Source: Asterias rubens (taxonomy: Eukaryota). From it: a stretch of 64,000 nucleotides of DNA. Positions within the stretch are counted from its first letter, which is position 1; every line of letters starts with the position of its first letter. The stretch covers positions 1,860,001 to 1,924,000 of the forward strand of contig NC_047073.1 of the NCBI RefSeq assembly GCF_902459465.1, written 5' to 3'. A program made the translations under genes and the position numbers. Below are positions 26,801 through 47,882 of this stretch, piece by piece. The notes under the pieces are model-generated. The model saw nothing but the letters and a program-made list of their open reading frames with translations, had not been told where the DNA came from and ran no database searches.

Positions 26801-27152
26801 CTAACTTGCAAAGCACGAAACAGGACCAGCCAAAATTACAACAATAAGTTTAAACTGTTGTGACTTCGTTAAAAGACAGTCGTCAAGCAGTATTTACCAC
26901 TTAATTAAAATATCTTTATGAACTTTCTCCATGGCTGCCTGACCTGGGTTGAATCAATAATCATGACATCTGATTCTGAGCTGACAAAAAAACAAAACAA
27001 AAAATAAATGTACATACCAAACATTCTTTACCAACTGTGAGAATGGATGTATATGCCTCTAAATACACCCTCTTTGCTCCTCGAACCACCTCTAACCCTT
27101 TCACTGTGATATCCTTTGCGTCTCCCAGCCCTAAACCTACAAAGTATAGCAT
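23805..27152 (-). CDS. DPH5: Diphthine methyl ester synthase, 6 coding exons, 288 aa
   Basis: Exons 27152-27018, 26123-25999, 25642-25534, 25187-25027, 24263-24154, 24031-23805; 867 nt, phases consistent. Motifs: [80 protein letters not shown]. Confidence 0.97.
25397..25488 (-). repeat. Tandem duplicate of the 3' half of DPH5 exon 3 plus its donor site
   Basis: Copy of about 25510-25595 with period 113. It keeps CAG|GTATGA and differs in the exon-derived part by two substitutions and a 6-nt insertion. Confidence 0.92.
26487..26523. repeat. (AAAC)n microsatellite
   Basis: CAAACAAACAAACAAATAAACAAACAAACAAACAAAC. Confidence 0.9.
26712..26781. mobile_element. About 70-bp palindromic mini-MITE
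   Basis: TACTCCTAGAACTATGAGG...CCTCATAGTTCTAGGAGTA. A second copy is at about 3596-3669, and a different short palindrome with similar ends is at about 53984-54044. Confidence 0.65.
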
Positions 27153-29295
27153 TGTGTGTGAGTGAACGTAGGATTGATCACTGAAGTATATTGTAGGTGT
27201 GCTGTAACCGAGTGGTTGTAAATAAAGATCAGGTGGTCGTTAACACGTGCGAGTCATCCAATGTTTGACCTTTAGCCTCGTTCAAACAATGTAATTGTGT
27301 ACAGGCCGTATTCAACTCAACAGTACATATGTTGTAGTTAAACTGTTGTTAAAAATATGCATGTTCATGTATTACTGAATCATTTAATCAAATTTTAGTT
27401 TATTTATAAAGACAAGTTTTTAAAAACGAAAGGAGTATAACAATATTGTGACAGTGCCTGAAGTCTTCAAAAGACTAAAAGGTTCAGGCTTGAGGGCGCC
27501 CTCCAATGCATGTTTTTGTCGTCTGCTACGCAAAGGGATAATAATGCTTTGTTTGTTTTTACAATAAAACAAGTAGAAATCTTTCAATTTGTTACTGTCA
27601 AGAGAAAATTATCTATTGATTTAATAAACTTGTACCCTCTGCTAGAGTTGATATGGGTTGTTCCATTGGTTGCACATTTCAAACGTCTGAGCTGATCAGT
27701 CTTTCATTTTGTTTTTACACAGGCCTACACCTTTCGGCAAATTAGTTTTTTGAGGCCCATGTCATCCACAATTTTTCTATAGTTAGTAATGAACCCCATG
27801 GCTCTCAATTTGTCTAGTACAGAACTTTTTGCAGGGGCTTTAGTGAGATGCATCTTGGGCCCAATTCATAGAGCTGAAAATATTGCTTAAAATGTCGGCT
27901 AAGCACAACTATAAGCAGGATACCAATTAAATGTTGGACATGTAAAATGTTATTTTTAGCTGGTAATGCTATTCTGATAAGCAACAATTTTTCCCAAAGC
28001 AACTTTTTACGCTTAAGCAGCTCTATAGGGTGGCCCTGTTGAGATCGGCTCATAAGACAATGAAATAATAATTATGACATATCTGAGGCATATTTTAATA
28101 TTTACAGTCATTTACAATTTTATTAGCAAAACAAAATGAAGTTTCATCAAGAACAGCGATTAAAGCATTAATCAAGGCAGTGCTTACTGGTTAATCGTAA
28201 TTTACCGACGATGCGTTATACGCCATTGCCGATAAGGTACTTACAAAAATCATTAACATCCGAATTATTTACATCATATAATATAAAATAGTCATTACAA
28301 AAGTTTGTATTAATAATAATTATATTTAAGAACTAGGTGGTAGCCATTAATGTTTGTATATATTTATGTTATTTGTTTAATGTTTAAGGCAACATCTAGT
28401 ACTTATTAGTTTGAGTAATCAATATTTTGCAAATCAAAAGACAATCAACTTTGTACAGGCGGTGCTTCATTGTTGTTTTTACAGTTAGATTTGTTGTTAT
28501 TCTTGCAGTTTTATATGCCGAGTCACACTTTTAAAACACGTCAAAAAGTCCGATACTCTATCAAAGTAGAAGCCATTAACTATTCTTTGCATTGTTACCA
28601 TACCCGGCCCAATTTCGTAGAGCAGCCAAGCACACAAATTTGCTTGGCATAAAATGTCTTCCTTGATGAAAAAAAACCCCAGGATTACCAACCAAATTTC
28701 CATTCTTTGCATATCGCTTGGTACTGGTATTCAGCTGTTCTTTGCTTATCCTAAAAATAACCTGAAAATTTGGTTGGTAATCCTGTTTTTACCCAGACAA
28801 TTCATGCTAAGCAAATTGTTGTGCTTAGCAGCTCTATGAAATTGGGCACAAGTCATTTTGGTTGATGATAACAGCCAATTATATTTTCTCACTCTACAAA
28901 GTATGTACAATATATTACTGATATTACCAAGTAAATATTTTTTTTGTATACCGATCTTCAGGACAAATGAACAGCGTTTCATTGTCACTAATTTGTATAA
29001 ATTAATCAACAATATTATTATTATCCTTTTAGTAGAAAAAAACGCACCACTGCGGAAGCGTATTGCAGACACATGAATAAATAAATGTGCTCCCTCTTAT
29101 CGTGTACGTAAACGATCGTGTACGTATACAAAATGAGAGAATTTGTTTATTCATGTGGCGCAATATGCTCCCGTACAACACTTACGACCCCCATTTAAAG
29201 AACTAGTCCTTTTTTTATATAAAAAGATCTACTTTAAAAAATCTTTATTTTACAAACCTAATTACCACAATCATTGCACGTTACCCACGTTATCC

Positions 29296-32200
29296 CTAAA
29301 CTGCGCCCGATACTATGAACGACCCATGCCTTCTTTTCTTCGAATGGTGGAACATGCTTTTATACAAATGGCGACAGCAGCAGCAACAACAACAACAGCA
29401 ACAGTACAGCAGGCATACCACACCAGCTATTACAGCACCCACAATAAGCCAGAAAGTTGTTACTTCTGCAGATGTAGAAGCTTCACTCCCGTCACAACAT
29501 GTGGCTTCCGAACAACACAGGCTGGAACATGTATTGTTCTGTAAAGTATAACAAGAACAAAAGAAACGATTAGGGCAAGAATGCCAGGTCAATGCATTGA
29601 AAGGGGCCATAGAAGTGTACGTGGTTAAGGACTTAACTGTTATCCATTTATTTTTTGGATGCAGTAATACCATATGAGTATCTACTATTACTTAGGTGGT
29701 TTTTTTCTTTTGAGAACTTGCTTGCTTTTTTTCTATTACCTCGTTTCGGAATAGCTTGCTCTAGTCATCGTCAGGAGACTGAACTGTTGTAGGCCTAAAT
29801 GTTGCATCATAATAAAAAACACTCAATATAGCTAGAGCATAGAATACGTCTGCTTTGGAATGCAAAATATGGTGGGTTCGAATCCCGCCTGTTGACATGT
29901 TCACATTTGGTGGTGCATTAGACGGTGACATGCGTAAATTTCAGTCAAGGGCATTGACACTACACACACGAGGCAACTTTTACAGGCAACGGCGAAGGCA
30001 ACCAACTGCAGTGCATGCTACGGGAGCATTGGTAGCACACGAGTAGGGAAAACTTCCGTATTCTGCTACCACTTTTCACTAATTTTTACCAAAAGGAATA
30101 TCTCATTTTGATTAGATTAGATCACAATATTTTATTCCATAACTAAATAAAAAGTGGTTGCAGACTACGGTATTTTTTTCCCATGAGTATATCATTTTTT
30201 AGAACGATGTATGAACGCCAAGAAAAACAATTTGTGAATATTCAAAATGTAAATGACCATTTCATCACCCGGCTAGTTAAATTTTGAGTCTTTTCGGAGA
30301 TTGCCGAGAACTGGTTGCCTGTAAAATTGCCTCGTGTTGCGTGCGCCGTAGGGAACCTGCGAAAGTTACACGTCGGCCATTAATGGAACACGCACGAATT
30401 TTCGGGAGGAGCAGAGCTGAAAACTTTCAGACACTACAAAAAAGGACTGTCTTCGCTAGAAAAAGAACCTCGCTGGATATGTGAAACTAGCTATAGATAA
30501 CAGGAGACTTTTCAAGAAACTGTTTGGATGTCAAAGGAATGTTTTTGTCGATGGATTTGTGGAAATGCTACGCACCTTGATGATGCATTGGTCTGGATTT
30601 ACCACGGGGCAGCAGTCGAGCGGACAACTGTTCGAAGTTTCAACGGAGTCGTCGCACCGCCCATCCCCACAAAAGCTACCTTCGGACGACCTGCAAATTT
30701 GTAAGAGATTTTCTTTTTATAAACTCAATTATTGGAAGGAAAACTGTCCGTATCCTGCCACCACCTTTCCCTCATTTTATTATACAAAAAGGAATATCTC
30801 GTTTGAGTACTATATTATTTCATAACGAATGAAAAAGTGGTGGAAGGATACGCACGACAAATGTGGCATATTTTCCCCGCTTTTTTGTTGATGTGCTGTC
30901 AGTGTGTTTATATTTAGTATCGGAGAGGCTCCAAACTCTCAAAATACGTTCACTGTAATATTCTGCTTCCCCCTCCCAACTTTAATGAGCATGTCCTCTG
31001 CTGCTGCCTAAAAAATATCAAATTTTGTTTTAACTGCCGAAAAATGACAGTCGGACGTGTAAATCTATTAAAATAACCATTTAGCTGTAGCCGTGTATTA
31101 TATGAATGCGTCTTTGTCACTGTCTACGCGAATGGCTTGAAATTGTTTGTTCTCGGTCGGGCTTCTATTAAGTGGCACATTATAACCACCAAACAATGAA
31201 ACGGTACGATAATAAGGATTAAGGATACTCTCCATTATGTTGTCAGAGTTTTAGTCCTATCTTATACTGACTACGGCAATCTACTTTTATTTGGTGCCAG
31301 GTCACATGAATATGACATGAATTTGACAGAGTTAAAATATTACAAATAGTGCAGCCCGTTTAATTGTTCCACACCCTTGAAAGAACATGTTATCACTTGA
31401 GGAACTTCATTGGCTACCGATCAGAGGACGTATCCATTTAAAAATTGCTCTTCCTGTTTGTAAATGCTAGAACAAAACTACTCCTCGATATATTTCCACT
31501 TTACTGTCACATCACACTCCTCCACGATTTCTTCAGTCCACACTTTAACATCACTCGCTTGAATGTTCCCCGAGCAAACAAAGTTCGAGTTAAAAAACTG
31601 TCAGTGTAGCTGGGCCAATGATGTGGAACAATCTCCCTATTGCCATGAGGGAATCTGTTACTCTATCTACATTTCGTAAAGCTCTAAAGACTCACCTTTT
31701 CCTAATCTTGTTAGTTGTTTTCAAGTGCGCTATGATATTGATGGAATAACGCCTTATAAATCGTAATTGTTATGTTATTCATGAGGAATATAGGCCATTA
31801 TGCCCAAACCTACCCGGGTCTGCATGCAGCTTCAAAACATTCTGACCACACCCAACAGTCGTCTGTGCTTAACCAGCCCCATCGCTGGTTACACCTGTCG
31901 AGAAAAAGTCATATTTATTCTAATAAAATAAATAAATAATGTTTATTGATAACATGCATTTGGTGGCGATTATACATGTTGACATTACGACACTCGCAAT
32001 ATTATGTTTTAAAAGTATTACATGTAACTGCACTATCTGTAAATACGTTACGTTTCGATGCTTACAATTTTTTCAAATAATTTAATATATATGGCCTTAC
32101 AAAGTTTATTTACTAGGCTATTGTTGGTTAAATTTTCCGTGTAAGCGCCCATGACATTTCCTGTTAAATTCCCGATCTACTTACCACCTTTCTGAGTTTC

Positions 32201-33558
32201 CCTTTTCGCTGAATGGTTAAATTTTGCTGTTTATTAACATTTTGTCCGTAATTACGTGATGTTGTATTGCTTATAGTTACCATTTTTCAACCAGATCATG
32301 GCTCTATAAGCATGGAGGTCTACCTCCATGCTCAAAGTTACGCACAATGTTTGGTCATTAATGCTATATTATTATGGTTGCTGAACCTTTCCTGTATCTC
32401 ATGACGTTTCCTGTTAGATTCCAAAGCCTACTTTACTTACCACTTTTCAGCGTTTCCCTTGTCGGTGCATTGGAACATTTGCTGTTGATTATAGTCTGTT
32501 GTGGTGAGATGAGATGGGTTGCAGTCATAGTTGTGTATGGTCACCTGTAAATTTGATAATGGAAGTATCTCAGTTTCCCCTTTGTAGGCCCGATGCTTCA
32601 CAAAGGCAACGAATGCGACTGCCTCCATGCCCCTGGGCCCAATTTCATAGAGCTGTTCAAGCACAAAATTGTGCTTTAGCAAAAACGTCCTTGCTTAGTA
32701 AAATCAGATTACCGGCCAAGACTCCACTAAATTGGTATGCTAAGTTAACAACAGCTAAATACCAGTCACAAGCAATGTATATGGCATGACATTTTTGCCA
32801 GTAACATGTGAAAAATAAGCGAGCTATTTTCATGTTTAAGCAATTTTTTTGCTTAAGCAGCTCTATGAAATTGGCCCCTGGTCATTGCCTTGATGCCCTT
32901 AAAATGCTCCAGTAACAATGTATAGTTTCCTGTGTGCCCTTTACCACGGAGAAAATGCATTGGTGCCCACGCCCTTTAAAAAACGAAACATACCTGCATG
33001 CCTTGTATTAAAATGATTTGATATTGTATGACTCCAAATACTAGGGGAAATCATGTGCCACGAGCCCCATTGATAATTTGTGAACCACCAACACTATTTT
33101 GTAAACCAAATAATTAGGTGCTGACTTTTAGGGATTGTTGAAAACATGATCAATAATTATTGCTTATGGTGATTGTTGACTTTCAACATGGCCCAACTTG
33201 ATAGACAATTCGACAATTAATCTTTATTAGATCCCAAGGGTAATTCAAATTCGCATACAGTAAAAACATTGAAACATTTAAAACATTTAAAAACATTAAA
33301 AACAGAGTGTAATACCTTGGTTTTGGCGTCTATTTTAGCTGTCCCTTCACCAAGCGTTTCACAACACGTGTAGAAGTAGTCTGTATTTCTCGTTGCATCG
33401 ACGAGATTGTAGTTGACGCAATTATTGTCGGAGGACTGGGCGGCCTTCTGTGGCCGATCAGCGGCGTCTTGAATCGGTGGCGAATCCGTCGCCAGACTCG
33501 CAACACCGAGGAGCAAAACTGTCGCAATGCAGAGGTAAAGGCCACATAATGATGACAT
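29296..33558 (-). CDS. Uncharacterised Cys-rich type I membrane protein, paralogue A (5 exons, 261 aa)
   Basis: Exons 33558-33316, 32544-32441, 31894-31814, 30690-30576, 29538-29296; phases 0,2,2,0; 786 nt. Signal peptide MSSLCGLYLCIATVLLLGVASLA, 20-Cys ectodomain (YFYTCC, DCNP, CNQRWGW, FCGDGRC..CPLDCC, CCSEATCC), TM FWLIVGAVIAGVVCLLY, ten consecutive Cys, short basic tail. Exon-by-exon homology with paralogue B supports the model. Confidence 0.82.
31375..31705 (+). mobile_element. L2/CR1-clade LINE 3' fragment
   Basis: Frameshifted translation LEELHWLPIRGRIHLKI...SVAGPMMWNNLPIAMRESVTLSTFRKALKTHLF is the typical C-terminus of L2/CR1 ORF2. Confidence 0.75.
32148..32290 (-). pseudogene. Decayed duplicate of paralogue A exon 2 (pseudo-exon with intact donor)
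   Basis: GAA AAG GGA AAC TCA GAA AGG TG|gtaagt compared with the real GAC AAG GGA AAC GCT GAA AAG TG|gtaagt, 256 nt apart. The downstream intron sequence is also duplicated; the upstream part has stops and frameshifts. Confidence 0.7.
32586..33000. mobile_element. Family C MITE interrupted by a nested family B MITE (32636-32877) with a CTG target duplication
   Basis: The host reads ...CTCCATGCCC-CTG-[GGCCCAATTTC...GAAATTGGCCC]-CTG-GTCATTGCC... Uninterrupted family C copies are at about 1863-2041, 6170-6327, 6583-6734 and 16735-16933. Confidence 0.8.
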
Positions 33559-34132
33559 GTTTAAAATCTGAGAAGCTGCCCGCGTTCCTCACATGATGGC
33601 TGAGTTTTAGGTGTTCACTGAAGAGGGAAATATAGTGTGTTGCTTGGCATAGGTTTGAGAAGGAAGTGTTCAACAGTAGAGCTTCGGTGGGAAATGTGGA
33701 TCTGTGAGTTGAAGTGATTGTGATCGGGGGAAGTTGGATTCCGGCTGAGGAGAACGCTGTGTTACCCGGTGGCCTTGCTCTCTGTTAATACGGGGAAGCT
33801 GTCAGTCCCTTGCTCAGGAAATAAAAGCTGTTTTGCTGATGCCTTCCCCGGTGTATCGCTTCACATACGAAGTTGCTACACTGTTACACCTATTGCGGAT
33901 GGGGCCATAGTATTAGAACTTGTGTACACACAATTTGGATGCGGTTGAGAGTGTTTAATATTAATTGTTGTAGGTCTACCCATGACATATAGATGATGCA
34001 TCTGATTTTCCTTTGTGTCGTTTAAACTTTTACTGAGGGATCTGTTCGCATCTGTATTTTTCTTAATAATTTGTTATACACAATTGTGGACGCTTTAACA
34101 TACAGTATTTTCGTTTGAATTATGAGACCTAG

Positions 34133-34282
34133 GGTGGATTTCACAAAGAGTTAGGATTAGTCTTATCTCGAGTTAGGACCAGTTTATACTCGTCCTAACT
34201 TAGGACTATCCATGCAATTTGTATATCTCCTAGGACTAGTCCTAAGTTAGGACTAGTCCTAACTCTTTGTGAAATCGACCCC
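34133..34282. mobile_element. MITE family D (GATTTCACAAAGAGTTAGGA TIR, TAGGACTAGTCCTA repeats)
   Basis: Ends are GGTGGATTTCACAAAGAG / CTCTTTGTGAAATCGACC. Related copies at about 19825-19972, 22580-22755, 45770-45880, 48220-48310, 48540-48670 and 52428-52550. Confidence 0.7.
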
Positions 34283-34361
34283 TGATCCTTGTATAGCACC
34301 ATGTAATGGTTTACAAGGTGCTGACGCAATGTGATGCCATTCAAAATGGACATTATTACAA

Positions 34362-34420
34362 AATATTCCTGACGATGACTAGAGCAATCTAGTCGAAACG
34401 TTCAGACCAATGAACGTATT
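34362..34420 (+). ncRNA. Minimal hammerhead ribozyme motif (second subfamily)
   Basis: CTGACGA-T-GACTAG(AGCAAT)CTAGTC-GAAA-CG-TT-CAGAC. Sister copies at 29741-29779 (-) and 39483-39523 (+). Confidence 0.5.
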
Positions 34421-37400
34421 ATGAGATGTCCCCTCGATCCACTATTAAAAGCTGAATAATGGTCATCGAATTCTATAGAAGTGTCTACCCAAAACTAGAC
34501 CACCGAGATTGCCCGGTAGCTAGGAGGCAGTTGGAATCATTTATTTTAGCAGTGGGTCTGCAACGATTTCCATCTATTCATATTTATTTTTGTCTGTTGA
34601 ATCAACAAGTGTCATCCATTCACGTGATGACGGAGGTTAATCCACAAGAGGGCGCGATGTAATGCAATTATGTTTTGGCCATCAGGTAGACTTCAAAGCC
34701 ACTTTCACGGACTTGGAACCAAGTCTGATGTGGTAGAAGTTGTTGTATGGCAACCTCGATTGAGTAAATAATACTCTATCTTGTGAATAGCGTTAAGGAT
34801 GTTAAGTTCCTGTTCCTGTGCGGTGTGCCCATCCGTTTACTTCCTTTTTACCTGATAAGTCAATCTTAAAACTTGGCAGGATGTCAAAAGGCCTTGAACT
34901 GATGCTACTGTAGGTTGTAACCCAATTAATTTTATGAAATTTACTTCAGACGAACCGGGCATCTTATAGTCACATAATGACAAATAGTCACACAATGACA
35001 GATGTCATTTTGCCCAGAGTCACTCAGTAGTAAAATATGTCATCATAATATTTGCATGTTGATTTGCATGACAAGTGAAGTCAGTTGCGACATTGATGCA
35101 AATAGATTTCAATAGAGGGCGGTTTAGATGTAAATCTAGGACAAGTTCGAGCAATGACACTTTTTGTCAACCACTAGTCAATGTTCCATGGTGGCCTTTT
35201 CGTGCAATACATCCTGTGTACCAGGCAAAATCGCCCAATGTGCGACAATAACCGCCATCTTTGATGACGTCAGAGGGCCCCCCTAAAAGCCGATTAAATT
35301 AAAACCATCGAAACAAGTTTATTTATACTGTCTTTATTCATTAAATGACATTTACAAACGCAATATTTAAAAATTTACAAACAAATTAAATATTTTTATT
35401 ATACTTTTTAGGCCTACGGGAAATAAGTTATACAAATTAATAATTACTGTTCAGCAGTAAATGGCTGGTTTAAAAATCAATTCATTGTAATTAAATGATC
35501 TGTACGTTTGGTTTTTGGAACCCTTCGAATGTTTCAATCATAAATGTATATTAACATTAAATAAAACTTAACCAGGGTCGCGTTTTTAAGGTATCGCTTA
35601 CAATTTGGATTGAATATGTCCACACAATCATAATAATCCCTAAGACATACATAATCTTAGAAGCGTTACCGCGGTAACGCTGATTTTTTTCAAATATTGA
35701 GGGAGAAAAGGTGATATATTTTTCCATAACCGCAGTTCTTCAAAGTTAAAATGTTTCTTAAAATGTATTACACATATCCAAATCTGCTGTACTTCTTACC
35801 ACGTAAGTTTTTTTTTCTTACATTACTTTCAGAGTCATTACCAGACGTACACAGACCCTGTCATTGTCTATATCGTCGACTTTGAAATTCGATTTCGTTT
35901 GTTTCTTTCTAAGTTATGGACAGCAATTCGCTTTGTTTGTATCGAAAACAACTAATCGATTTGTACGAGTCGATAACTGATACGCTTCCGTATCAATAAT
36001 CTTTGACGTTTTTTTTCAACTGTGGTCTCTTTAAAAAAAAGGAAATCTGTGAACATTTGTTGGTGTGGTTTAATAAAATTAATAATACAATTTATAAAAT
36101 TAATTAATAATCACATTTTCTGAGAACTATGATGTATGATCGAGTGTATTTTTATTTTGAAGATTATAGTGGCCCATTGACTTTCTACTTTAGGGATAAT
36201 CATATTTTTCAAACAAGCAAAACCTTCTGAAAGAAATAGCAATTACCTGAAATCAATTGAAAGAAATTCAAAAATAGTAAAAGTTTCAAATTTGAAAGTA
36301 AGAATTGTTATAGAACAATGACTTCCTTTGAATATACCCGAAATTGTTGGGAAAGTAACGCATAATCGCATTAGCCTTTTTGAGAAATGGCGGACACTAC
36401 ATGAGTGCACTGATTGGTTTGGGTGTTTACAGAGAATGTTACCCAAACTAAATAGTGTCGTGTTGGGTCCACCATCCTTCAAAATTTGCTTACTTACAAG
36501 TAACACAATCATTTATAACAAAAAGATAAATAAAAAAGCAGTAATATAAAGTCTCTGGTAATGCCCGTTCATCAAAGTTAATATTACACTTTCAAATCAC
36601 ACAATATTTATTCAGAAACCTTTAAGAATACTTTGTAAAGCCGAAGTATTATTTGCATGGAATTGATTTAACCCGTTTACCTGCCGTTTTAGTTAATTAT
36701 CTTAGTTGAATAAGATTACATACAAAATAATATCAAGAATTACCTTACATTTAAATTATTTAATATTATTCAAATCGCTCTCTTTATTTGAGTGAAATAT
36801 ATGAGGCCATCCTGGACATATCTGACGTAACAATTCGAGGCTCATGAATTTCGTCGGAGAGTGGCATTTAGCCTACGTCAAGATTCTGACGGTCACGTGG
36901 CATGAATGTATCGTTAATTTCACTTTCATTTCGCATTCAAATTGTACGGACACGTATGTATACATGTGGGGAACTGATGGGGAATTCTTGCCCAATTTCG
37001 TTGATCTGTTTAAGCACAAAGGTAAGCAAAGTTTATTTTTGCTTAACATAAAACTGTTAAGCAACATTTAGATCTGCATCTGTGCATAAACAGCAGTTGT
37101 GTGAGATCGGGCCCTGACTCAAAAACGGCGCAACTAAGTTTTTGAGTGATGACGTCAGATGAATTTGGTTAATAATACAAATATATTAGTTATTTTGTCT
37201 AATACCATAATTGGTTAAAAAAAGGAATTTAAGAATTTAAACAAAAGTGGTAATTATACATGACCACACACTAAAACAGTCCCGTAATAAGTTTTAAATT
37301 TACTTCATAATAATATCATCCATGACCAAACAAATGAATACATTTGAAAAATAACTCCTTTACGACAATATTTTCATCTTGGAGTCGATTATCTTTTATA

Positions 37401-38251
37401 AAAAATACACTTTCATTCCGAAAACTGTTGTCAATTGCATAAAATACCATCATATTTTATATACACGTTCGATTTGCATAAAAGGCTATCATTGGCTAAG
37501 AGTCGTGTGCAGGGCGTGTACGCGTAATCTTTCCCATTGGTTTTACATCAAAGATTGTGGTCAATGACTTCATGTGCAATCTATCTACGAAGTACTAGGC
37601 CTATGACAGCTTTTTTAACAGTTAAATGTTTTCTTATCGATTCCAAGTTCGCTCGGTGTTTGTTTCAAAATTTCAAACTTGTAATGTAGCTGTTTGTCGT
37701 GGTAGGGTTAGTCGTCTCTCAAAAGTTATGCAGAGTCTAGCCGGCTGGAATATGACTTGATTACTAGGCCTAACTTACTGTCCAGTTGTGCGCGCCTAAT
37801 CTGAACCGAAACCGTACTTAAACATTTTCGATAATGATAAAGAGCTGTTTAAGCAGAAACTAGTCGCCTGCTGTTGAGCAAAGATAGGCAAGTTTACCAG
37901 TCACAGGTTGTACATGTGACATGGTATTTTGGCTGGTGAACTTATTCTTGTAAAGCATGACGTTGGTTGTGCTGAGCGTTTCCTATGTGCTTGAGCAGCT
38001 CTATGAAGTTGGGAAAGAGTCCAAATACGATTTAACATGTTCTGCTGTAAGGATTGCCTTAAAAATTAAGTAATGTTTTAGAGTTAATTTACGGTGTTAT
38101 GTCAAGTAAAATGGTTCATTATTTGGGGGATTATACTTGTTTCGTGCATGCATATTGTTTCAGGCCGGGATGTGACTCTGTAAGCGGATAAATTCATCTT
38201 TTTTAGTAAAGTTGGTGCTGCAAACATTGTTTTAATCTAACATAAATGTAC

Positions 38252-38522
38252 CAGTGTTGTTGACTCGAGTTGGTGACTTGGACTCGAGTCAGAATCGAGT
38301 CACCAGTTTTACTGACTTGAGACTTGACGTGAGTTGGGGGGGGGGGGAACTTGTGACTTACTTGGGGGGGGGGTGTGTCTTGTGACTTGATTTGAGGGAA
38401 AATGACGTAATTCTTGACTGTACTTGACTTGAGGGAAAACTACTTGAGGCTTGGCTTGTCTTGCACAAAAGTGACTTGTGACCTAACTTTACTTGAGAAT
38501 TAATGACTTGGTTACAACACTG
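38252..38522. mobile_element. hAT-like MITE with GACTTG subterminal repeats
   Basis: TIR CAGTGTTGT...ACAACACTG; 8-bp flanks AAATGTAC / TAATGTAC (7 of 8 identical). Confidence 0.8.
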
Positions 38523-38893
38523 TAATGTACACTAGTAATCGATGAATACCGACATTCAATGGGGGATCGAGGTACCTGACTATTATTCCCCTCACTGTAT
38601 TGGTTTGGTTCACATTGCTGTGAACGGGGAACCAACCAAGATGGCATATTGCAACAAGCAAGAACACCAACCAATGTTCTGAACCTGCGACGTAAATCTG
38701 TGGCAAATGACTGTCTTTGTCTCAGAAATGACTGTCTTTGTCTGCCTTGGTTTTACGCGGGAATTTTAAGTGTTTCTTCACATCGTTCCCGCGCACGAGT
38801 TGTTGCCCGCAGATTAAACAAAAAGATGCCGGCTCGATACAATCAACGTCATATGCCGTCATGATGACACACTGCCGTAATGGATGGAAAGCG

Positions 38894-40389
38894 TTACATG
38901 GATAACACCGTCATCGTGGTGTCTTGACGGTCTACCCTAGGTGGATGTTTCTCTTTTCTCTGCACATTCTTGCATCTCCTGAAGCAACACCAACAACAAC
39001 AGCAACAGCAGAAATTGATGAGTAGGAATACTCCTCCGATTACACTGAAAACAATGATCCAAAAGGTATTGAAGAACTCCTCTGTAGAGCTGGCACAGCA
39101 CGCCGTCTCAGAGCAGCAGGCCGGGGTACACGTGCTGTTTCGCATGAGGCATTTTTCCGGGTTCTTTTGGGGGCAACAGTCGGACGGACATGAGTCGGTG
39201 CTCTCGGTCGAATCACAACGTCCGTCACCGCAAAACCCTTCCGATAGGTACCTACAAGATAGACAAGTTAAATATAATAATAATAATGCATAATAATAGT
39301 GTTTTTTTTATAAAGCGCACAAATCCGTCACTCAGTGACGCTCCTGGCGCTGTAACATACAGTGTTTCATGCAAGATGTGAACTAGGTTTGAATTATGCG
39401 ATCCAATCATTTTATAGCACAATGTAATGGTTTACAAGGTGCTGGCGCAATGTCATGCCATCCAAAATGGATATTATTATTTCTGACGATGACAAGAACA
39501 AGCTATAGTCGAAACTATGAGACCTTTACACACTCACTCCGCGGTAGTGAAGTTTATAGTTAGAAGTCCCTCGATCCACTAAAGCTGAAATGGTCATCGA
39601 AATTGCCAGAGAACAATGAAAGAAATAACACCCTTGTTGCACAATGTGTGCTTTAGTTTTAGATGACCAAAAAGTTTGATGCCTGAAGTCTTTAAACATT
39701 TTGGTGAGAAATTACCCCTTTCTAAAAAACTACGTTAGTTCAGAGTGAGCTGTTTCTCACAATGTTTTATACTACCAACAGCTATCCATTGCAAACTCAT
39801 GCAAACTAATTATTTTGAGTAATTACCAGTGTGTCCATGCCTTCAATAACAAGGATCTCATAGCAGGATTTACTAAAATTTGACCACAACCATGTTTGGA
39901 CAAAATACCGGGATCTGGACTTTAAGTGACCCTATAACAAATAATAAACCTTTGAAAAAGTAAACTAATATTGGTCATCGGTACACCAGGAGCCGTACCT
40001 GGTCATTATGAATTTGCATTTTCTTTGTTTATACCCGTGTTTCCTTTAATTGTTTTGTGTTTATTTACTGCATATCCCTGAAGGATGTTATACTGTTTTG
40101 TTCACACGGTTATCACTTCATCTGGTGTACTTCTTCCTTGAAGATAATATTACAACCTTGGTCATCGTTCCAGGAAAATAGTGGAATATATCATAGAAAC
40201 AACAAAGAGCATTGTCATTCATTGTTTTAGATACTTGTTTTATGCTTCGTGTATTTCAAATGAATCCGGATGCATGTTTCAAAGATACCCCGGAACGCGG
40301 GCTTCCTTTCTGATGATCGATCAGAAAAGTTGGCCAAAAACCAGCGCGGAAATTTGTTTAGGATAAAAATGTATGGGAACACAATTATT

Positions 40390-40420
<31 letters not shown>

Positions 40421-43400
40421 GGGGGGGGGTTGCAGTTTTAAGGTACACTGACACAATGGTTTGCTCTCGCCTTGCATATTGCTTTGCTGAACGGAACGAG
40501 TTCACATAGGCCTTACTCTTATAAAGGGTCAAAGTGTAAAACTGAATAACGTCACACTGTAAATGACAGTTGCTGTTCACAAAAAAAAGCAAGATTTGGT
40601 AGGGTCCAGTTCTCTCTTATTGAAATATTTATGCTTCTGAACGGGGGGAAACGGGGTGTTTTTAGACAAACAGGCTTACCCGGGGTCCGTTTCCTCTTTT
40701 ATGCACACACCAGCAAAGCATGCCGTCCAAGCCCAACACTCCTCGGCGGCTATCCAACCCCATCGGGCGTTACACCTGGTAACAAAATACAAAAACAAGA
40801 AATAAGCATGCGGCGAATGACTCGAAAAATATTCTATTAAAAACACAGCATTATAGAAAGCAATGTACCAGCGAACATAATCATTAAGCCTAGGTTTATA
40901 CGGTCAAAGAGAAGGAACAGTGGAGGACGATTTGATAAGCTAAGGCTAAATAACTCTGCATGCATGTTTCCCCCTCCCTTTTTAAGGGGGTGGGGTTCAA
41001 ATCAGGTTTCAAAAAGATTCACTCTGTCATTGCAGTGATCATAAAGTATGACTCGGCGTTCGAACTGTCATATACTCGTGAATCCCCCCCCCCCCCGTCT
41101 GTTGCCCAAATACTCGTATTCGAATGCTAGTCGGCCACGTACTCAACAGGGTTCAAATTCATAAGGCATGTTACTTGCTAAGCACAGAAAAAGTATTGCT
41201 TAACAGAAACAGGTTATCCATAATAACAATTGTTGTGACTGCCTCACTCAATATTTGCGTATCAAAGAAGATCGTCAAGCGGTATTTGCTGCTTAAGAGT
41301 TGTATTGGTCCCAGTATTTGATACTCGTTGTAAAAGTTTGATTACCATAACTTTTAATTGTAAAGTGCCTTATCAGAAGTAACAAAACAATTTTTTGTTG
41401 TCAGTAAGTTTAAGGTTCAGCAGTATGACAGGCACAAACACCCCCTCTATGTTTCCGGTGGATCCTGAACCACGCCCGGTCCGTTCCCCAGAAACACCAC
41501 ATTATGGTTACAGCTTCACCACAAAGACAAAACAAAAAACAAATGTCATTGTCTCATTCTTTTACCACATACTTTAGCCCACCTTATCCACCATGTCTCA
41601 TTGGCCCTGACCATATTTGTCTTATTCCCTTTACCCACGGAGTCGGAGGCCTTTTGTGGGGCCAGCGGAGCTCCGTCCCCCACGAGATATGTCAGCATTT
41701 TCAGAAAACGAAAGAGTTAGGCGGGTATGAACCGCCTCCCTCACAGCGTACGGTTTGTACGCTATAATACGCCTTTATAAAGTGTTGTGAACGGCCCTTA
41801 CATTGTATCAAGTGACTGAATACAGAGCAGTCACCAATATTATTTTATCCATTGTAAAGATTGATTTTATCAACTTTGACCAGACATCTTTAATCTCAAG
41901 GGGGGGGGGGGGTCCGAAAAACACAACGGATATTGTTAGACAAGTGCCCTCCAAGGACATGTGTGTACAGAAAGTATCATGACAGAAGTTAGTCGGTCAT
42001 TGGTGCAAAGATAGCATCCGGTGGTCAAAACAACAAATGCATTAGACTTGTGGACAAGTCGTTAAAGGTTCTTTAAACTACTGGTAATTACTCAAAATAA
42101 TTGTTAGCATCAAGACTTACTTGGTAACGAGCAATGGCGGGCTGTTAATAGTATGAAACATTATGAGAAACCGTTCCCTCTGGTACATAGTTTCCTAATA
42201 GTTTTTGAGAAAGAGGTAATTTCTTACTCAAAATATTAAAATACTTAACGAGCTATGGAGAGCTGTTTATAGTATAAACATTGTGAGTTGCTTTATGGTT
42301 GGGATACATCAAGTGGGAATACTGGTCTTTACAATATTACGTATTGCATTTTATACGACTTGTCCACAAGTCTACGAATACATATGAGACAAATAACTAT
42401 ACGGCTGTTTGTTTAATCAGTGGGGTGTATCTGTTTCACAACTAAATGATTTTGCTCAGTAGGATATTCTTTTATTAGGTTGATATTTGTTACAATATTG
42501 AAAGTTATTGATGAGGTTTTGGTCAGGAAGACCGTTCTTGCAAACGGTCGAGGCCAAATCTTTTAGAGCTATACTGCCCCCAAATGAGAACTTGGCATTA
42601 ATCTTAAATTATTACTAAACAATAATTAGTTGGGGACCATTCAAACGCAGCATGTCATTTGGTTCGGGTGCCAACCAATCAAGTTGTTTTTAGTTACATG
42701 TTATTGTTATCTTTGATGGTCAAAAATTTATAAAATCTCAGGAATGTTTGGTTTATAAGGAACGGCCACAAGCCGTTCGATTACCATTTCAAATTTAATA
42801 ATACCTGCAGTGTACATGTGGTTCTACTTTTGGTTTTACAAATGACACCAAACGTTTCCTTCGAAGGAAATCCTCTTTTTTTAGTTTTAAAGTCACTGGA
42901 CACGTTTAGTATTTACTCAAACTTTTAACAAGCAACGGAGAGCTGTTGATAGTATAAAACATTGTGAGAAACGACTCCCTCTAGACTGCCCTCTGAGTAA
43001 CGTAGTTTTTAAGCTTAAAGAAAGAGGTAATTTCTCACTCAGTATGAAACTGAGTTTAAAGAAAGACCGTCAGGCCTTAAGCCTCTCCGAGGCATACGAA
43101 AGCACACAAATTGAGCACCACACCAAGGGTGTTTTCTTTCATTATTCTCTTGCAACTTCCATGACCAGCTGAGCCAAAATGTTCACAGGTTTATTATTTT
43201 TCGCATAATGTCATGGGATACACCAAATGAGAATACTGTCTTTGACAACTACCAAACGTGTCCAGTGCCTTTAAGCAGGCCGGGTGGGTCACTGTGGGTC
43301 AATTTTTCTGAGCTCTGGTACACTACATTTGACTGTTTGTTTTGTTTTTACTGGCATTATTCTTTGGCCGGATACCAAAAGGCCACTGACGAAACGTTTC

Positions 43401-46400
43401 CTGTTACGTCACCGCGATCCCAAGCTAAGTTCAATCGAACACAAAAATGCCCTCGGCTTTTTTGTTAACCAAGTAAAAAATAACTGAAGGCAAATTATTT
43501 GCAATTTTTGTTGATGTTCCTTTTCTGTTTTGAAGTGTTTTGCGGATTCTCTGTACTGTCTTAAAGCATAGAGCTTAAAGTCAAAGTAGGTCTATTCATT
43601 CGGTTTTTTTAACTATTCTGTTGTTTTAGTCCTACAAGTGAAGATTTAGCAACAATACCCTTGAAAATTTCATGTCAAAAGGTGGTAGCGTTTTTAAAAA
43701 ATTGCCGAAAATCTGGAGCGGTTATGTCCATGCAGGAAGAATAATCCGCAATTGGAATGCACAATCCGTAAAACGTTTCTCTGATTGAAACGTTTGTTTA
43801 TAAAAACTGTATTCCTCTGAAAGTATACTTGTTTCTCAAAATGTCATACGTTATCGACATCTGTAGTGATTCTTACTAAGTATAAGTTTGTGGAAATGAT
43901 TTTGTTTTAATAGTAATTACCAAAAGTATACCTTTCTGTAAAGGCACAGGACATGGTTATCGGTAATTACTCAAAATAACTGTTAGCATAAAAACTTACT
44001 TGGTAACGAGTAACGGAGAGCTGTTAATTGTATAAAACATTCTTTCATGTCATAATTTTTCAGGGTTTTGTAAAATCATGAGCATTGTAGACTTGTTTGA
44101 TTAGTTGATTGTGAATTTGCTTAATTAAGTATAATTGAAACAAATTAATATGTTGAACAAAAATCACAAAACGGGATACCAGTGCAATTACTCTAACAAA
44201 AATAAATGCTTTATGCGAAATTGTTTCAAATATAAAGGCACAGTAGACACCTTTGGTAATTGTCAAAGACCAGTCGTCTCACCCGGTAATCACAAAATAA
44301 TGCATAAACTAGCATCTGTGAACATTTGGACTCAATTGGTCATCAAAGTTGCACGAGAATAATGAAAGAAAAAACACCCTTGTTGCAGAGATTTAGTGTG
44401 CTTTCAGACTACTTACAAAACTTCGGGTCTGAAGCCTTTTATCCGATTCATTGTTTGACTGAGAAATTACCTCTTTCACAAAAACTACGTTACTTCACAG
44501 GGAGCCGTTTCTCACAATGTTTTATACTACCAACAGCTCTCAATATTGCTCGTTTAAACCAAGTAAGTTATTATGCTAACAATGACTTATACCAATACTG
44601 TCCAGTGTTTCTACCTCCATGCTATATAGCTCCATGATAAAGGGTGCGTTCGTTTAGCTTCCCTGGGTCGACCCCGGTGTGTGGCATTTTTTTTCCCCAA
44701 GACAAGTGTGTGCTGATAATTACCCTCGTTCGTCCTGGTAAAAAAAAAAAACGCACCGGGGTCGACCCAGGGGAGCTAAACGAACGCACCCATAATGAAG
44801 TAGACCTACCCTTGGCTTCGTAACTGTTATGATTCACCGGGGTATGACCGGTATTTTGGTTGCCGTTCTGTTTTTTTTTCCTTTCAAACGTCTGTCTGCT
44901 GATACAAACTAAACGAATTAACTGAAGACCGACCCGTGTGTGACCTAGGGCCGTATCCTAATCGGTGGCTACAGCTACGATTGTTTCTAAGTGTGTTGCT
45001 AAGGACGTCCTATACTTCAACGCATGATGACGCAGAAATCTAGCCGTAGCCGTAGCTGTAGCCGCTTATTCGGATACGGCCTATAAAGTGGTCACTGTAC
45101 AGTCCATTCGAGGACCTGCTTGCTGAAAGGTATGGCCTATATTGTAGGATTTTGTAAGTTTCATTCTGGAAGCTCATGTGTTAAATACTTTAAAGGCACT
45201 GGACACTTTTGATGTCAAAGACCAAGTTTCTCACTTGTAACCCAACATAAAATAACAAATCTGTGAAAGTTTGGACTAAATTGGCCATCGAATATGCAAG
45301 ATAATAATGAAAGGAAAAAACACCCTTATAACACAACTTTGTGTGTGCTTTCAGATGCCTAATAAAAGGCCCCAGGCCGAAAGTCTTCCAATATTTGAGT
45401 GAGAAATTATCTCCTTCTTAAAAACCACATTACTTCAGAGGGAGCCGTTTCTCTTAATGTTTTGTATTATCAACAGCTCTCCATCTAACATTATTTTGAG
45501 TAACGGCCAGTAGTCTCCAGTGCCTTTAATGGCGTCAGTGATTTGTTATAGCGTCTTTCTCGTAGAGGAACTCATTCATTTAGGAGTATTTTAAGCTGAC
45601 AGATCGGAAGCGACGCCTATTATAAGAATGTCATATGATAGCTACTGTGCACCACAGATGTACAGTGGGACAGCAGTGTTTTCGAGTCCTACATGACTGT
45701 AATACTATGTACAGCGCTGTTGAGTTTTTTTTTTCTTTTCAGTAATTACATCTCCATTGTAATTATAGCCTTATTTTGAGTTAGGACGAGTTTAACTTGT
45801 CGTAACTTAGGGACTATAACTTTAAGTTTTTAAAAACTTCCAAATAGTCCCAGTCCTAGTGTACGTGAAATCGACCATAAAGCACTTATACCTATGTAAT
45901 TATGTTTAAGCTTTAAGATCTAGGTCCGGTTTATGGCCGATTTGACTCGAATTATTTAAATTCAAATTTGAAATAGCTATTGTTTTAGACTCAAGAAGGT
46001 TAACTTTCATTTAAGAGACTGTAAAACCGAAATAAATTATCTAAGTCAAATGTTTGTCTATTAACAAAAATTGTTTTTTTTTATTTATAATCTTAATCCC
46101 TCTGTAGCAAACGTTCCCAAATTTCGTATTTCAAATAGCAATTTTTCGATCAGAAAAACTGCGGCAAAATTTACAAACTTCAATAGTTCTAATAATTAAT
46201 CCTCTTGACATAAAAAGTTGGCTATCCCTGTCTATTCTATTTGTTTTAGTTTAAGTGTTACATTCTGAAAACTTATTGACCCAATTTCTGGTTCCCATAA
46301 TTGGAGCTGATCCATTTTCTGGTCAGGTTAAAAAAGGTAACAAAACTGAAATAAATCAGGCCTGTATTTACGCGGTCTCCATTGCCTCTGGTCTTGGCCT

Positions 46401-47882
46401 TGTTGCCCTCTTCAAAGTTTCCAATTGACTTGCAGATTTTCCAATGGAAGGCCCCCTTTGGTAAATGTAAATGGCCTTGCCCCTTCGAATATATAATCCC
46501 TTGCTAGAAAACTAATTCGGATACTGTGACGTTTGTCCCAATTATTTGGGTCATTTTTGACACAGGGTTCCGTGGATAGGTCAGGTCCCCACGGAACCCA
46601 GATCCGGATAAATTCTGACCGGAACTGTTTATAGAGTGCGGTTTAAAACTTACATTTCTCTGGCCGTCTTTTGTCCTATTTCACTGTTGCAGTTATACCG
46701 CTCCGTCTCGTTAAATGTCGCCCATCCAATTCGTGGTGGGTTACAGTCCCAGTTTGCCACCATTTCCTTGGATCACAAGAAAAATATAACAATGCTGTAT
46801 TATTGCATACCGTAATCAAAGGTTTTTCTACAGGGAATTTCTCACGACAAATCACTTACAGGCACTGGACACTGTTTGTATTAACTCAAAATAATTGTTA
46901 GCATAGAGACTTAATTATTGTTAGCATATAGAGACTTACTTGGTAACAAACATGCAATGGATGGAGAGATGTTGTAGTATCGTGAGAAACGGCTTCATCT
47001 GAAGTAACGTATTTTTCGAGAAAGAGGTAATTTCTAACTCAAATATTTGAATCTGATTAAACACTTTTTTAGGTTGCACCTTCGATGACCAATAATTAAG
47101 TCCACATTTTCACAGATTCGTTATTTTATGCTTATGTTGGGATACACCAAGTGAGAATTCTTGCCTCTGACAGGATTACCAAAAATGTGTCCGGTTAGGC
47201 AGTACAATCCCATCTCAAGTTGCAGTTCATTTTGAAATTATTAACTACATTTCCCGTTTTACTGTTTCCAGATTAATCTTAATAAGAAATTGTCTTGCTG
47301 TTTAATTATGCTCTGCCTTTGAAGTAGATTAGGAAATAGGCGAGTTTAAATAACTTGTCTGCGTTTTTTTCACTGCAGCTGAGTTGATTTGCAACACCGG
47401 GTTACTGTAGCAGTTTCAGCTTTATTTTTTAGTTTTGAGAAAAAATAGTGAAAATCACAAAACAAAGTTTTCAGGGGAGTCGCGTCGGTTTCGTTCCAAA
47501 AAGTTATAGATTCATCCTGAAAAGCTACACACTAAAATTGTTAGAATAGTTTTTTCTTCACTCATGTTTTGATGTAGGCCTTTCATATTGAAAATGATAT
47601 CATTTCGGGAAGTTTAATTTATGCCCCTACCTCAGTTGCACTCGGGGGGTTGTCAACCTTCAGCTGCCCACAACATGTGTAGAAATAGTTGGTGGACTTG
47701 CCGATGGAAAGCTTGAAGTTTGTACACTCCTTTGGCGCCCCTTCCCCGGTCACATCTTGCCCCGTCCCCTGGCCCCCGACCACGGCCTGCGACGGTTGGT
47801 TGCCTTGCCTCGCTCTCTCCGGCTCTTGGCAGCTGACTACGCATAAAAGTAGCAAAGTTAAACTCGATACATACAGCAACAT
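38894..47882 (-). CDS. Uncharacterised Cys-rich type I membrane protein, paralogue B (4 exons, 272 aa)
   Basis: Exons 47882-47631, 46766-46654, 40775-40680, 39251-38894; phases 0,2,2; 819 nt. Signal peptide MLLYVSSLTLLLLCVVSC, the same 20-Cys skeleton (YFYTCC, DCNP, CNARWGW, FCGDGRC..CPSDCC, CCSETACC), TM FWIIVFSVIGGVFLLINF, then CCCCCCWCC and a basic tail. Confidence 0.82.
42891..43270. mobile_element. Family A MITE, complete copy
   Basis: TTAA|AGTCACTGGACACGTTT...AAACGTGTCCAGTGCCT|TTAA. Confidence 0.8.
44641..44792. mobile_element. Harbinger-like MITE with 37-bp TIRs
   Basis: GGGTGCGTTCGTTTAGCTTCCCTGGGTCGACCCCGGT / ACCGGGGTCGACCCAGGGGAGCTAAACGAACGCACCC, flanked by TAA. A related element lies at about 21880-22132. 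Confidence 0.75.
44947..45083. mobile_element. MITE with GGCCGTATCC..AAT..G(T)GGCTACAGCTACG TIRs
   Basis: Inverted ends at 44947 and 45083. Related copies at about 14553-14685, 55425-55500 and 60405-60545. Confidence 0.65.
45194..45525. mobile_element. Family A MITE, complete copy
   Basis: TTAA|AGGCACTGGACAC...TCTCCAGTGCCT|TTAA. Further degenerate copies lie at about 1-190, 24057-24150, 39600-39845, 42075-42340, 43935-44610, 46858-47190, 50050-50350, 52560-52650 and 61903-62210. Confidence 0.75.

What the first reader, a model, noticed from the sequence alone, without database searches (positions are those of the whole stretch)
29296..47882. Tandem pair encoding an unrecognised 20-cysteine cell-surface protein family
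Seen: two diverged paralogues (261 and 272 aa), each with a signal peptide, an ectodomain in which all 20 Cys align, one TM helix and a short tail. Shared motifs: C..YFYTCC, DCNP, CNxRWGW..CWxWxxCF..C..PG, FCGDGRC...E...CPxDCCP..NP..C, NxTC..CCSExxCC. Sequence between the Cys is poorly conserved, which indicates an old duplication with a constrained disulfide scaffold. I do not recognise the overall domain. The CGDGxC..CPxDC part recalls Cys-rich repeats of microbial and protist surface proteins (from memory, uncertain). The Trp-rich exon suggests a binding surface. Inference: a lineage-restricted receptor or recognition family.
Basis: partly seen in the sequence, partly recalled or inferred. 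Interest (0 to 1): 0.75.

Follow-up and report, generated by a model that had tools for sequence, protein, structure and literature searches.

The report
Undescribed 20-cysteine membrane protein gene pair
Two neighbouring starfish genes encode real, expressed single-pass membrane proteins whose 20-cysteine outer domain matches no described family or known fold, yet the family is old and occurs in echinoderms, amphioxus, a ribbon worm and an annelid; its function is still unknown.

Summary
They are 41% identical (BLASTP 9e-50) and all 20 ectodomain Cys align. RNA contigs from four runs of two Asterias species carry all four introns of A. B is supported by orthologues and by RNA runs that hold its last exon. 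The order B, A, TP_methylase gene and the exon structures are the same in Patiria miniata, so the duplication predates the split of those starfish lineages.

The family has no Pfam, NCBIfam or PDB sequence match, and every public name is "uncharacterized". A confident ectodomain model (pLDDT 88.5, pTM 0.85) finds no fold relative outside the family.

The family is not lineage-restricted. Members occur in all five echinoderm classes, Branchiostoma, a nemertean and an annelid. The CGDGxC...CPxDC unit is the same motif as tandem repeats in microbial surface proteins. The membrane-proximal C*C*CC*CC pattern recalls Shisa-like adaptors, but the membership tests fail.

Most likely these are palmitoylated type I surface glycoproteins that act through ectodomain binding. 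That function is inferred, not shown.

The parts
33316..33558 (-). Gene A (LOC117298055) exon 1: ATG, signal peptide, first Cys and the YFYTCC motif
   Evidence: Built. The product is identical to P0002, RefSeq 'uncharacterized protein LOC117298055 [Asterias rubens]'. The RNA joint 32544/33316 is seen in 4 runs.
32441..32544 (-). Gene A exon 2: DCNP motif
   Evidence: RNA joints on both sides.
31814..31894 (-). Gene A exon 3: CNQRWGW..CWVWSECF..C..PG (Trp-rich helical part)
   Evidence: RNA joints 30690/31814 and 31894/32441.
30576..30690 (-). Gene A exon 4: FCGDGRC..E..CPLDCCP..NP..C module
   Evidence: RNA joint 29538/30576. The module profile matches microbial repeat units.
29296..29538 (-). 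Gene A exon 5: NNTC..CCSE..CC, TM helix (about 29472-29404), poly-Cys run (29403-29374), basic tail and stop
   Evidence: The 1202-nt RNA contig X2 record 7 covers exons 1, 2, 4 and 5 with 0 mismatches (table 8); its exon 3 piece is not in the abridged table, but the run's joints at 30690/31814 and 31894/32441 have the same depth (41.8) and an 81-nt shorter side, the length of exon 3 (table 5).
47631..47882 (-). Gene B (LOC117297677) exon 1: ATG, signal peptide, YFYTCC
   Evidence: The N-terminus matches the A. amurensis orthologue P0092. RefSeq's A. rubens model P0093 replaces it with an upstream exon.
46654..46766 (-). Gene B exon 2: DCNP motif
   Evidence: The alignment to Patiria and Acanthaster orthologues runs ungapped across the junctions.
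40680..40775 (-). Gene B exon 3: CNARWGW..CWAWTACF..C..PG
38894..39251 (-). Gene B exon 4 (equivalent to exons 4+5 of A joined): CGDG module, NSTC..CCSE..CC, TM helix (about 39076-39011), poly-Cys (39010-38972), tail and stop
   Evidence: RNA runs X1 and X2 hold 1.00 and 0.91 of its sampled words. The Patiria orthologue has the same single exon.
24152..27164 (-). Downstream neighbour: gene with a TP_methylase domain, a synteny marker and not part of the family
   Evidence: tblastx of the Patiria downstream gene (288 aa, PF00590) hits five blocks here at 74-98% aa identity.

Best explanation
The two genes are real, transcribed tandem paralogues of an undescribed, ancient bilaterian family of type I single-pass membrane glycoproteins. 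Each protein has five parts. First, a cleavable signal peptide. Second, a compact ectodomain of about 160 aa held by ten disulfides (20 conserved Cys), with a beta-sheet N-part, a Trp/Phe-containing helical part, one copy of the CGDGxC..E..CPxDC unit also found as tandem repeats in microbial surface proteins, and a membrane-proximal C*C*CC*CC stretch with a conserved N-x-T sequon. Third, one TM helix. Fourth, in echinoderms, a run of 8-10 Cys at the cytoplasmic end of the helix. Fifth, a short basic tail that is conserved within each paralogue but not between them. The most likely mode of action is an inference: the protein sits at the cell surface, or in a secretory or endocytic membrane; it is S-palmitoylated on the poly-Cys run, which partitions it into ordered membrane domains; and it acts through binding by the family-wide conserved ectodomain, as a ligand-binding subunit or co-receptor, because it carries no enzymatic or known signalling domain. 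The paralogue-specific tails would then give A and B different sorting or partners. The A clade has a YxxM sorting-type motif and a KKRRH(G)S basophilic kinase-type site; the B clade has VDRQDTTMTVLS. Shown here: the gene models, splicing of A, paralogy, synteny, taxonomic spread, absence from domain and structure libraries, and a confident predicted single-domain fold. Inferred: disulfide bonding, glycosylation, palmitoylation, location and binding function.
Against: No experiment or expression pattern is available, and the run records were coded and gave no tissue. The function is therefore argued from architecture alone. No signal-peptide or palmitoylation predictor was available. The poly-Cys run is confined to the echinoderm clade, so it cannot be the family's core mechanism. 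The tails are not conserved across the family. RefSeq's model of B lacks the signal peptide, so an alternative non-secretory isoform cannot be excluded. The absence of a fold match rests on a predicted model, and the tools' own notes say that a weak or missing match does not prove a new fold.
Confidence: 0.6

Rival explanations
1. The proteins are divergent Shisa-like (STMC6) transmembrane adaptors. The membrane-proximal six-Cys stretch plus TM would be the Shisa-type module, and the proteins would bind other receptors in the ER, Golgi or at the surface and control their maturation, trafficking or degradation.
For: The last six ectodomain Cys (A: C178, C185, C189-190, C195-196) form C*C*CC*CC just before the TM helix. 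That is the pattern a paper gives as the signature of Shisa-like proteins (PMC5578492). The feature search lists CYYR1 and shisa-like-2A clusters among the named neighbours, but only at 0.69-0.70. Both are short single-pass proteins without catalytic domains.
Against: Pfam Shisa_N, CYYR1 and related models do not match any of 19 members or the last exons, even at E<=10. The tails contain no PPxY or LPxY motif (sequences). The atlas scores are below the tool's level for a lead. The six Cys are part of a 20-Cys domain that AlphaFold models as one unit. I could not run a profile-profile test against a Shisa alignment.
Confidence: 0.15
2. This is the reader's version: a rapidly diversifying recognition family (gamete, self/non-self or pathogen recognition) in which only the disulfide scaffold is constrained.
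For: Non-Cys identity between A and B is 33%. Among the listed differences between A. rubens and its congener in gene A, 9 codons change the amino acid and 7 do not. Unnamed relatives occur as intronless tandem arrays of 3-5 genes in eukaryotic contigs, which is typical of expanding recognition families.
Against: Starfish keep just two copies in conserved synteny. Orthologues are 61-77% identical across starfish orders, and the tails are strongly conserved within the B clade. The family is old and spans four phyla rather than being lineage-restricted. The substitution list is partial, because one search shows only the best-supported differences, and it gives roughly dN/dS below 1.
Confidence: 0.15
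3. The models are artefacts or decaying pseudogenes, in other words chance Cys-rich ORFs stitched together.
Against: Gene A equals a RefSeq protein exactly. Its four introns are in RNA contigs of four runs. Frames are intact and all splice sites are canonical. Orthologues are present in several phyla. Paralogue similarity is E 9e-50.
Confidence: 0.02

Closest known systems
Shisa-like / STMC6 single-pass transmembrane adaptors (Shisa, CYYR1, WBP1, VOPP1, TMEM92)
   Same: Short type I single-pass proteins without catalytic domains. They have a Cys-rich extracellular part next to the TM helix, and the six membrane-proximal Cys follow the C*C*CC*CC pattern given for that group (PMC5578492).
   Different: No profile match to Shisa_N or CYYR1. 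No PY motifs in the tail. The ectodomain has 14 further conserved Cys and is predicted to be one 160-aa domain. Echinoderm members carry a poly-Cys run that is not described for Shisa.
Tandem CGDGxC-x3-E-x4-CPxDC repeats of microbial surface or secreted proteins (for example P0020, P0026, P0042; fused to trypsin, beta-helix or NEW3 domains; unnamed in Pfam and NCBIfam)
   Same: The roughly 25-aa unit with 4 Cys, an invariant Glu and an invariant Asp is the same motif. A profile of the animal module scores 26-35 bits on each microbial unit, against 7.7 bits or less on shuffles.
   Different: The starfish proteins have a single copy embedded in a larger domain, with an extra Cys (CPxDCC). The microbial proteins have 3-11 tandem copies and unrelated flanking domains. 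Whether the likeness is common descent, transfer or convergence is open.
Small TM proteins with Cys clusters at the membrane (Pfam TMEM52, plant CR_prot_dom_plant)
   Same: A TM helix followed by a Cys-rich stretch. These give the only weak Pfam similarities: TMEM52 E 0.013 at 15.9 bits (cut-off 26.4) and CR_prot_dom_plant E 0.021 at 15.7 bits (cut-off 34.1).
   Different: Both are far below the curated cut-offs, are confined to the TM and poly-Cys region, and so are probably compositional. Neither has a comparable ectodomain.
Automatic name 'keratin-associated protein 5-3-like' given to the Branchiostoma belcheri member
   Same: High Cys content only.
   Different: The amphioxus member has no Pfam hit of any kind (protein 9) and shares the full ectodomain of this family. 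The name reflects composition.

Membership tests
The undescribed 20-Cys ectodomain family (echinoderm, amphioxus and spiralian 'uncharacterized proteins') | Full-length ectodomain homology with the 20 conserved Cys | tested here: met
   Against a family ectodomain HMM, A scores 2.5e-52 and B 1.4e-51. 18 Cys columns are invariant in the 19-row alignment and 13 in the 41-row alignment; in each, the remaining columns of the 20 hold Cys in at least 90% of rows.
The undescribed 20-Cys ectodomain family | Signal peptide, ectodomain, single TM helix and short tail | tested here: met
   Hydropathy shows segments at A 1-27 and 204-240, and B 1-20 and 212-246. No dedicated SignalP or TMHMM tool was available.
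Shisa-like / STMC6 | Six extracellular Cys in the pattern C*C*CC*CC next to the TM helix | tested here: met
   A: C178, C185, C189-190, C195-196. B: C188, C195, C199-200, C205-206. The pattern definition is from PMC5578492. This is a match of pattern only.
Shisa-like / STMC6 | Profile match to Shisa_N, CYYR1 or related Pfam models | tested here: not met
   None is listed for 19 members or for the isolated last exons at E<=10.
Shisa-like / STMC6 | Pro-rich cytoplasmic region with PY (PPxY/LPxY) motifs | tested here: not met
   The tails are 25-30 aa, basic and without PPxY or LPxY (sequences).
Microbial CGDG Cys-repeat proteins | The CGDGxC..E..CPxDC unit | tested here: met
   26-35 bits per unit, against 7.7 bits or less for shuffles.
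Microbial CGDG Cys-repeat proteins | Tandem array of the unit | tested here: not met
   One unit per protein in A, B and all aligned animal members. Microbial proteins have 3-11.
Any family with a solved or predicted fold | Structural match covering the ectodomain | tested here: not met

The most novel reading that the evidence does not exclude
The ectodomain is a truly new disulfide-rich fold that defines an ancient bilaterian surface-receptor family. The family would be retained in marine invertebrates (echinoderms, amphioxus, nemerteans, annelids) and lost from vertebrates and the classic ecdysozoan models. It would be built around a small acidic four-Cys unit, possibly Ca2+-binding, that it shares with prokaryotic surface-protein repeats. 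That would make it an unstudied signalling or adhesion component of deuterostome and spiralian biology.
Probability: 0.3. Interest if true: 0.6.

Novelty: new variant of a known kind. Interest (0 to 1): 0.45.

Why it matters
If the reading holds, this is a conserved animal cell-surface protein family with no name, no domain model, no literature and no detectable structural relative. It is old enough to have been present in the bilaterian ancestor, and it is absent from the organisms in which most receptor biology was done. It offers a compact ten-disulfide domain for structural work. It also offers a testable link between an animal ectodomain and a repeat unit of microbial surface proteins. 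Finally, it provides a clean pair of paralogues with the same ectodomain scaffold but different tails, in species where knock-downs are feasible (the sea star Patiria, and the sea urchin single-copy gene LOC762976). It does not by itself answer a long-standing question, because the function remains open.

Tried and rejected
1. Pfam scans of every exon, of ten full-length members and of all 19 rows of A1 at E<=10 gave only sub-threshold hits in the TM and poly-Cys region. NCBIfam gave nothing.

2. Profile searches of PDB sequences with A1 and A2 gave 0 hits at E<=10.

3. The first full-length AlphaFold model was mediocre (pLDDT 66.8), and its fold searches were dominated by the long TM helix. 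I replaced it with an ectodomain-only model built on a deeper alignment.

5. ESM-Atlas feature searches scored 0.75 or less and 0.62 or less, below the level of a lead.

6. Literature searches for eleven locus or accession identifiers and one locus tag of family members found no paper. The Pei and Grishin Shisa paper is not held.

7. Rfam and tRNA scans of 28-49 kb found nothing. The repeats there are interspersed intron repeats.

8. The profile search with A1 in the word-indexed database recovered few members, missing even rows of the query alignment, so it is not a census.

9. The spliced 272-aa B protein has no reference and I did not type it in. It was therefore searched as its last exon and through orthologue ids.

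Full report
WHAT IS THERE. Protein look-ups identify it as Asterias rubens.

On the minus strand I rebuilt two genes from stop-free segments and splice signals.
- Gene A has five exons: 33558-33316, 32544-32441, 31894-31814, 30690-30576 and 29538-29296. They total 786 nt and encode 261 aa.
- Gene B has four exons: 47882-47631, 46766-46654, 40775-40680 and 39251-38894. They total 819 nt and encode 272 aa.
- All introns are GT..AG.

The two proteins align over their whole length: BLASTP E 9e-50, 41% identity, and 33% once aligned Cys pairs are set aside. Each has 20 Cys between the signal peptide and the TM helix, and all 20 align. No third copy or fragment lies in the window. One structural difference stands out: the CGDG exon and the terminal exon of A form one exon in B.

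ARE THE GENES REAL? Gene A's product is letter for letter the RefSeq protein LOC117298055, 'uncharacterized protein'. I laid the contigs of four RNA runs (two of the window's species, two of a close congener) on 29250-33650. All four modelled introns appear as joints with CT..AC ends on the plus strand, that is GT..AG on the minus strand, at 29538/30576, 30690/31814, 31894/32441 and 32544/33316. One 1202-nt contig covers exons 1, 2, 4 and 5 without a mismatch; its exon 3 piece is not in the abridged piece table, but that run's joints on both sides of exon 3 share the contig's depth and have an 81-nt shorter side, the length of exon 3. The congener's transcript differs by substitutions and by two in-frame 3-nt indels.

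B has three other lines of support:
- an ungapped alignment across all three junctions to the Patiria miniata and Acanthaster planci orthologues, at 61-62% identity;
- the Asterias amurensis orthologue P0092, which has the same signal-peptide start;
- RNA runs X1 and X2, which hold 1.00 and 0.91 of the sampled words of its last exon, whereas they held only 0.38 and 0.19 of the intron-rich span of gene A.

RefSeq's A. rubens model for B (LOC117297677, P0093, 269 aa) is identical from residue 'VSCQEP' onwards. It begins, however, with 'MGIGIWGEKDLP', encoded by an upstream exon at 52210 on the minus strand, and so lacks the signal peptide.

AGE AND ARRANGEMENT. In Patiria the B orthologue lies upstream of the A orthologue on the same strand, followed by a gene with a TP_methylase domain. 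The same order holds here: B, then A, then five tblastx blocks of that gene at 24152-27164 on the minus strand. Patiria A has the same five coding blocks and Patiria B the same fused last exon.

A maximum-likelihood tree of 28 ectodomains gives these supports:
- an A clade of Asterias, an unnamed starfish and Patiria, at 100/99;
- a B clade of Asterias, Patiria and Acanthaster, at 98/94;
- an echinoderm clade, at 100/98.

The positions of A and B relative to the sea urchin, sea cucumber and brittle star sequences are unresolved. The duplication is therefore at least as old as the split of the Asterias and Patiria/Acanthaster lineages, and it may be older.

THE FAMILY. An exhaustive phmmer search with B's last exon (118 aa) against 1.84 billion representatives found 47 proteins at E<=1e-3. 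A family ectodomain HMM recognises about 50 of the proteins fetched. The members that carry names are all 'uncharacterized', 'hypothetical' or given a compositional name. They come from:
- Asteroidea: Asterias rubens and A. amurensis, Patiria, Acanthaster;
- Echinoidea: S. purpuratus LOC762976, Lytechinus;
- Holothuroidea: Apostichopus;
- Crinoidea: Antedon, with two proteins of consecutive accession numbers on one record;
- Ophiuroidea: Amphiura;
- Cephalochordata: Branchiostoma belcheri;
- Nemertea: Tubulanus;
- Annelida: Owenia.

Further unnamed members lie on long eukaryotic contigs of metagenome assemblies, as intronless genes in tandem arrays. The family is therefore not lineage-restricted. 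Among the members whose names I could look up there is no vertebrate, arthropod or nematode, but I did not take a complete census.

The 19-row alignment has 18 invariant Cys columns plus F105, E160, D168 and N174, and two more Cys columns above 90%. The 41-row ectodomain alignment confirms these and adds W130, F136 and P166 as nearly invariant.

IS IT A KNOWN FAMILY OR FOLD? No, as far as these tools reach.
- Pfam: nothing above threshold for any exon, ten full-length members or all 19 aligned members. The only weak hits (TMEM52, CR_prot_dom_plant, Comm, SCIMP) cover the TM and poly-Cys stretch and are 10-20 bits below their cut-offs.
- NCBIfam: nothing.
- PDB sequences with two family profiles: nothing at E<=10.
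- Literature: no paper mentions any of twelve identifiers.

A full-length AlphaFold model was mediocre. An ectodomain-only model on 41 sequences is confident, with pLDDT 88.5, pTM 0.85 and no segment under 50. It forms one compact domain with strands 4-12, 17-23 and 56-64, two longer helices 68-82 and 89-97, and four short helices in the C-terminal Cys-rich part.

Searches with that model gave:
- Foldseek against PDB: best E 0.34;
- AFDB clusters: only two hits below E 0.1, and by their accession numbers both belong to this family;
- ESM-Atlas shapes: TM<0.4;
- viral models: best E 0.16.

The weak neighbours (papain-like or NlpC/P60 chains, S27 zinc ribbons, GIY-YIG/Bro-N) share only a three-strand-plus-helix arrangement. 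By the tools' own caveats this does not prove a new fold, but no described fold was found.

TWO PARTIAL RESEMBLANCES.
That is correct. The phmmer hits include long proteins matched in 3-11 stretches, whose sequences are tandem YCGDGxCxxxExxxxCPxDCG units attached to trypsin, beta-helix or NEW3 domains. A profile of the 25-aa animal module scores 26-35 bits on single microbial units, against at most 7.7 bits on composition-matched shuffles. The unit itself has no Pfam or NCBIfam model. The animal proteins hold one copy inside a larger domain. The invariant Glu and Asp, together with the frequent Asp or Asn in CG(D/N)G, suggest a cation site. That is my inference only.
(b) The six Cys nearest the membrane follow C*C*CC*CC, the pattern a paper gives for Shisa-like (STMC6) adaptors (PMC5578492). 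But Shisa_N and CYYR1 models do not match, the tails have no PY motifs, and the atlas neighbours CYYR1 and shisa-like-2A score only about 0.70. I therefore do not file the family under Shisa-like; it stays as a rival mechanism.

HOW IT PROBABLY WORKS. Directly shown from the sequence:
- an N-terminal hydrophobic segment and one TM segment;
- a conserved N-x-T sequon before C185;
- in the echinoderm clade, 8-10 Cys at the cytoplasmic end of the TM helix (A CCCCCCCCCC; B CCCCCCWCC..C);
- short basic tails that are conserved within a paralogue (B clade..RHP..VDRQDTTMTVLS; A clade: (L/M)Y(K/N)SMF...SKKRRH(G)S) but not between paralogues or phyla.

From general knowledge, an even number of conserved Cys in a secreted domain implies disulfides. 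Cys clusters at the cytosolic membrane face are typical S-acylation sites. YxxM resembles a tyrosine-based sorting signal, and RRxS a basophilic kinase site.

Only the ectodomain is conserved family-wide, and there is no catalytic or signalling domain. The most economical reading is therefore a membrane-anchored, acylated binding protein (ligand-binding subunit, co-receptor or adhesion partner) whose two starfish paralogues differ in sorting or partners. I put about 0.9 on the structural statements and about 0.35 on the functional ones, or 0.6 overall.

A partial list of differences between congeners in gene A gives 9 replacement against 7 silent codons, with the Cys unchanged. That is a loosely constrained surface on a fixed scaffold. 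The list is incomplete and does not show positive selection.

VERDICT. The family is indeed undescribed and of cell-surface architecture, the duplication is old, and the CGDG recollection is right. It is not lineage-restricted, however, and the receptor or recognition role is untested.

On novelty, this is an undescribed family and possibly a new fold within a familiar class (Cys-rich single-pass membrane proteins), although its members already sit in databases as automatic 'uncharacterized' predictions. Interest is moderate. It is a good target for structure and knock-down work, but no open question is settled and no unusual mechanism is demonstrated.

Noticed in passing
window 52174-52210 (-) and about 47836 (-): RefSeq's A. 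rubens model of gene B (P0093, 269 aa) starts at an upstream exon, ATG at 52210, 'MGIGIWGEKDLP', donor GTAAGC. It joins an internal AG inside exon 1, which removes the signal peptide. This is either a mis-annotation or an alternative 5' exon.
   Followed up: partly
window 32631-32924 and 30279-30425 (introns of gene A): These intron stretches have summed RNA-contig depths of tens of thousands to about 185,000 in all four runs, with dozens of diverged contigs and many loose ends. They are interspersed repeats transcribed from many loci, not part of gene A. Rfam and tRNA scans found nothing there.
   Followed up: partly
window 24152-27164 (-): A gene with a TP_methylase domain lies immediately downstream of gene A. 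Five blocks are 74-98% identical at protein level to the gene in the same position in Patiria miniata, so microsynteny is conserved across starfish orders.
   Followed up: partly
L001 7135-10744; L002 2006-16284; L003 3713-12789: Relatives of the family on long eukaryotic contigs of metagenome assemblies are intronless and stand in same-strand tandem arrays of 2-4 genes of 247-337 aa (286 and 247 aa in L001; 337, 298, 329 and 324 aa in L002; 296, 298, 329 and 293 aa in L003), next to a class C GPCR and a ZBED5-like gene. The source organism is unknown. One sub-clade has an extra N-terminal Cys-rich part (..GAPGTNTRCVC..CRCQYWP..).
   Followed up: no
window 39694-39789, 44449-44544, 45389-45484; 42062-42162, 43941-44041, 46856-46916: Two families of short interspersed repeats (61-96 nt, 64-89% alike), mostly in the 5.9-kb intron 2 of gene B (one D1 copy lies in intron 3 and one D2 copy in intron 1), plus a 74-nt repeat shared by the A-B intergenic region (34285) and B's intron 3 (39406).
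   Followed up: no
P0008 (Amphiura filiformis XP_072019680.1), residues about 150-165: In this brittle star model the FCGDGxC half of the CGDG unit is replaced by unrelated sequence, while CPIDCC is kept. This may be a mis-predicted exon, or a genuine paired loss of two Cys, which would point to a C150-C155 disulfide.
   Followed up: no
It is unrelated to the present pair.
   Followed up: no
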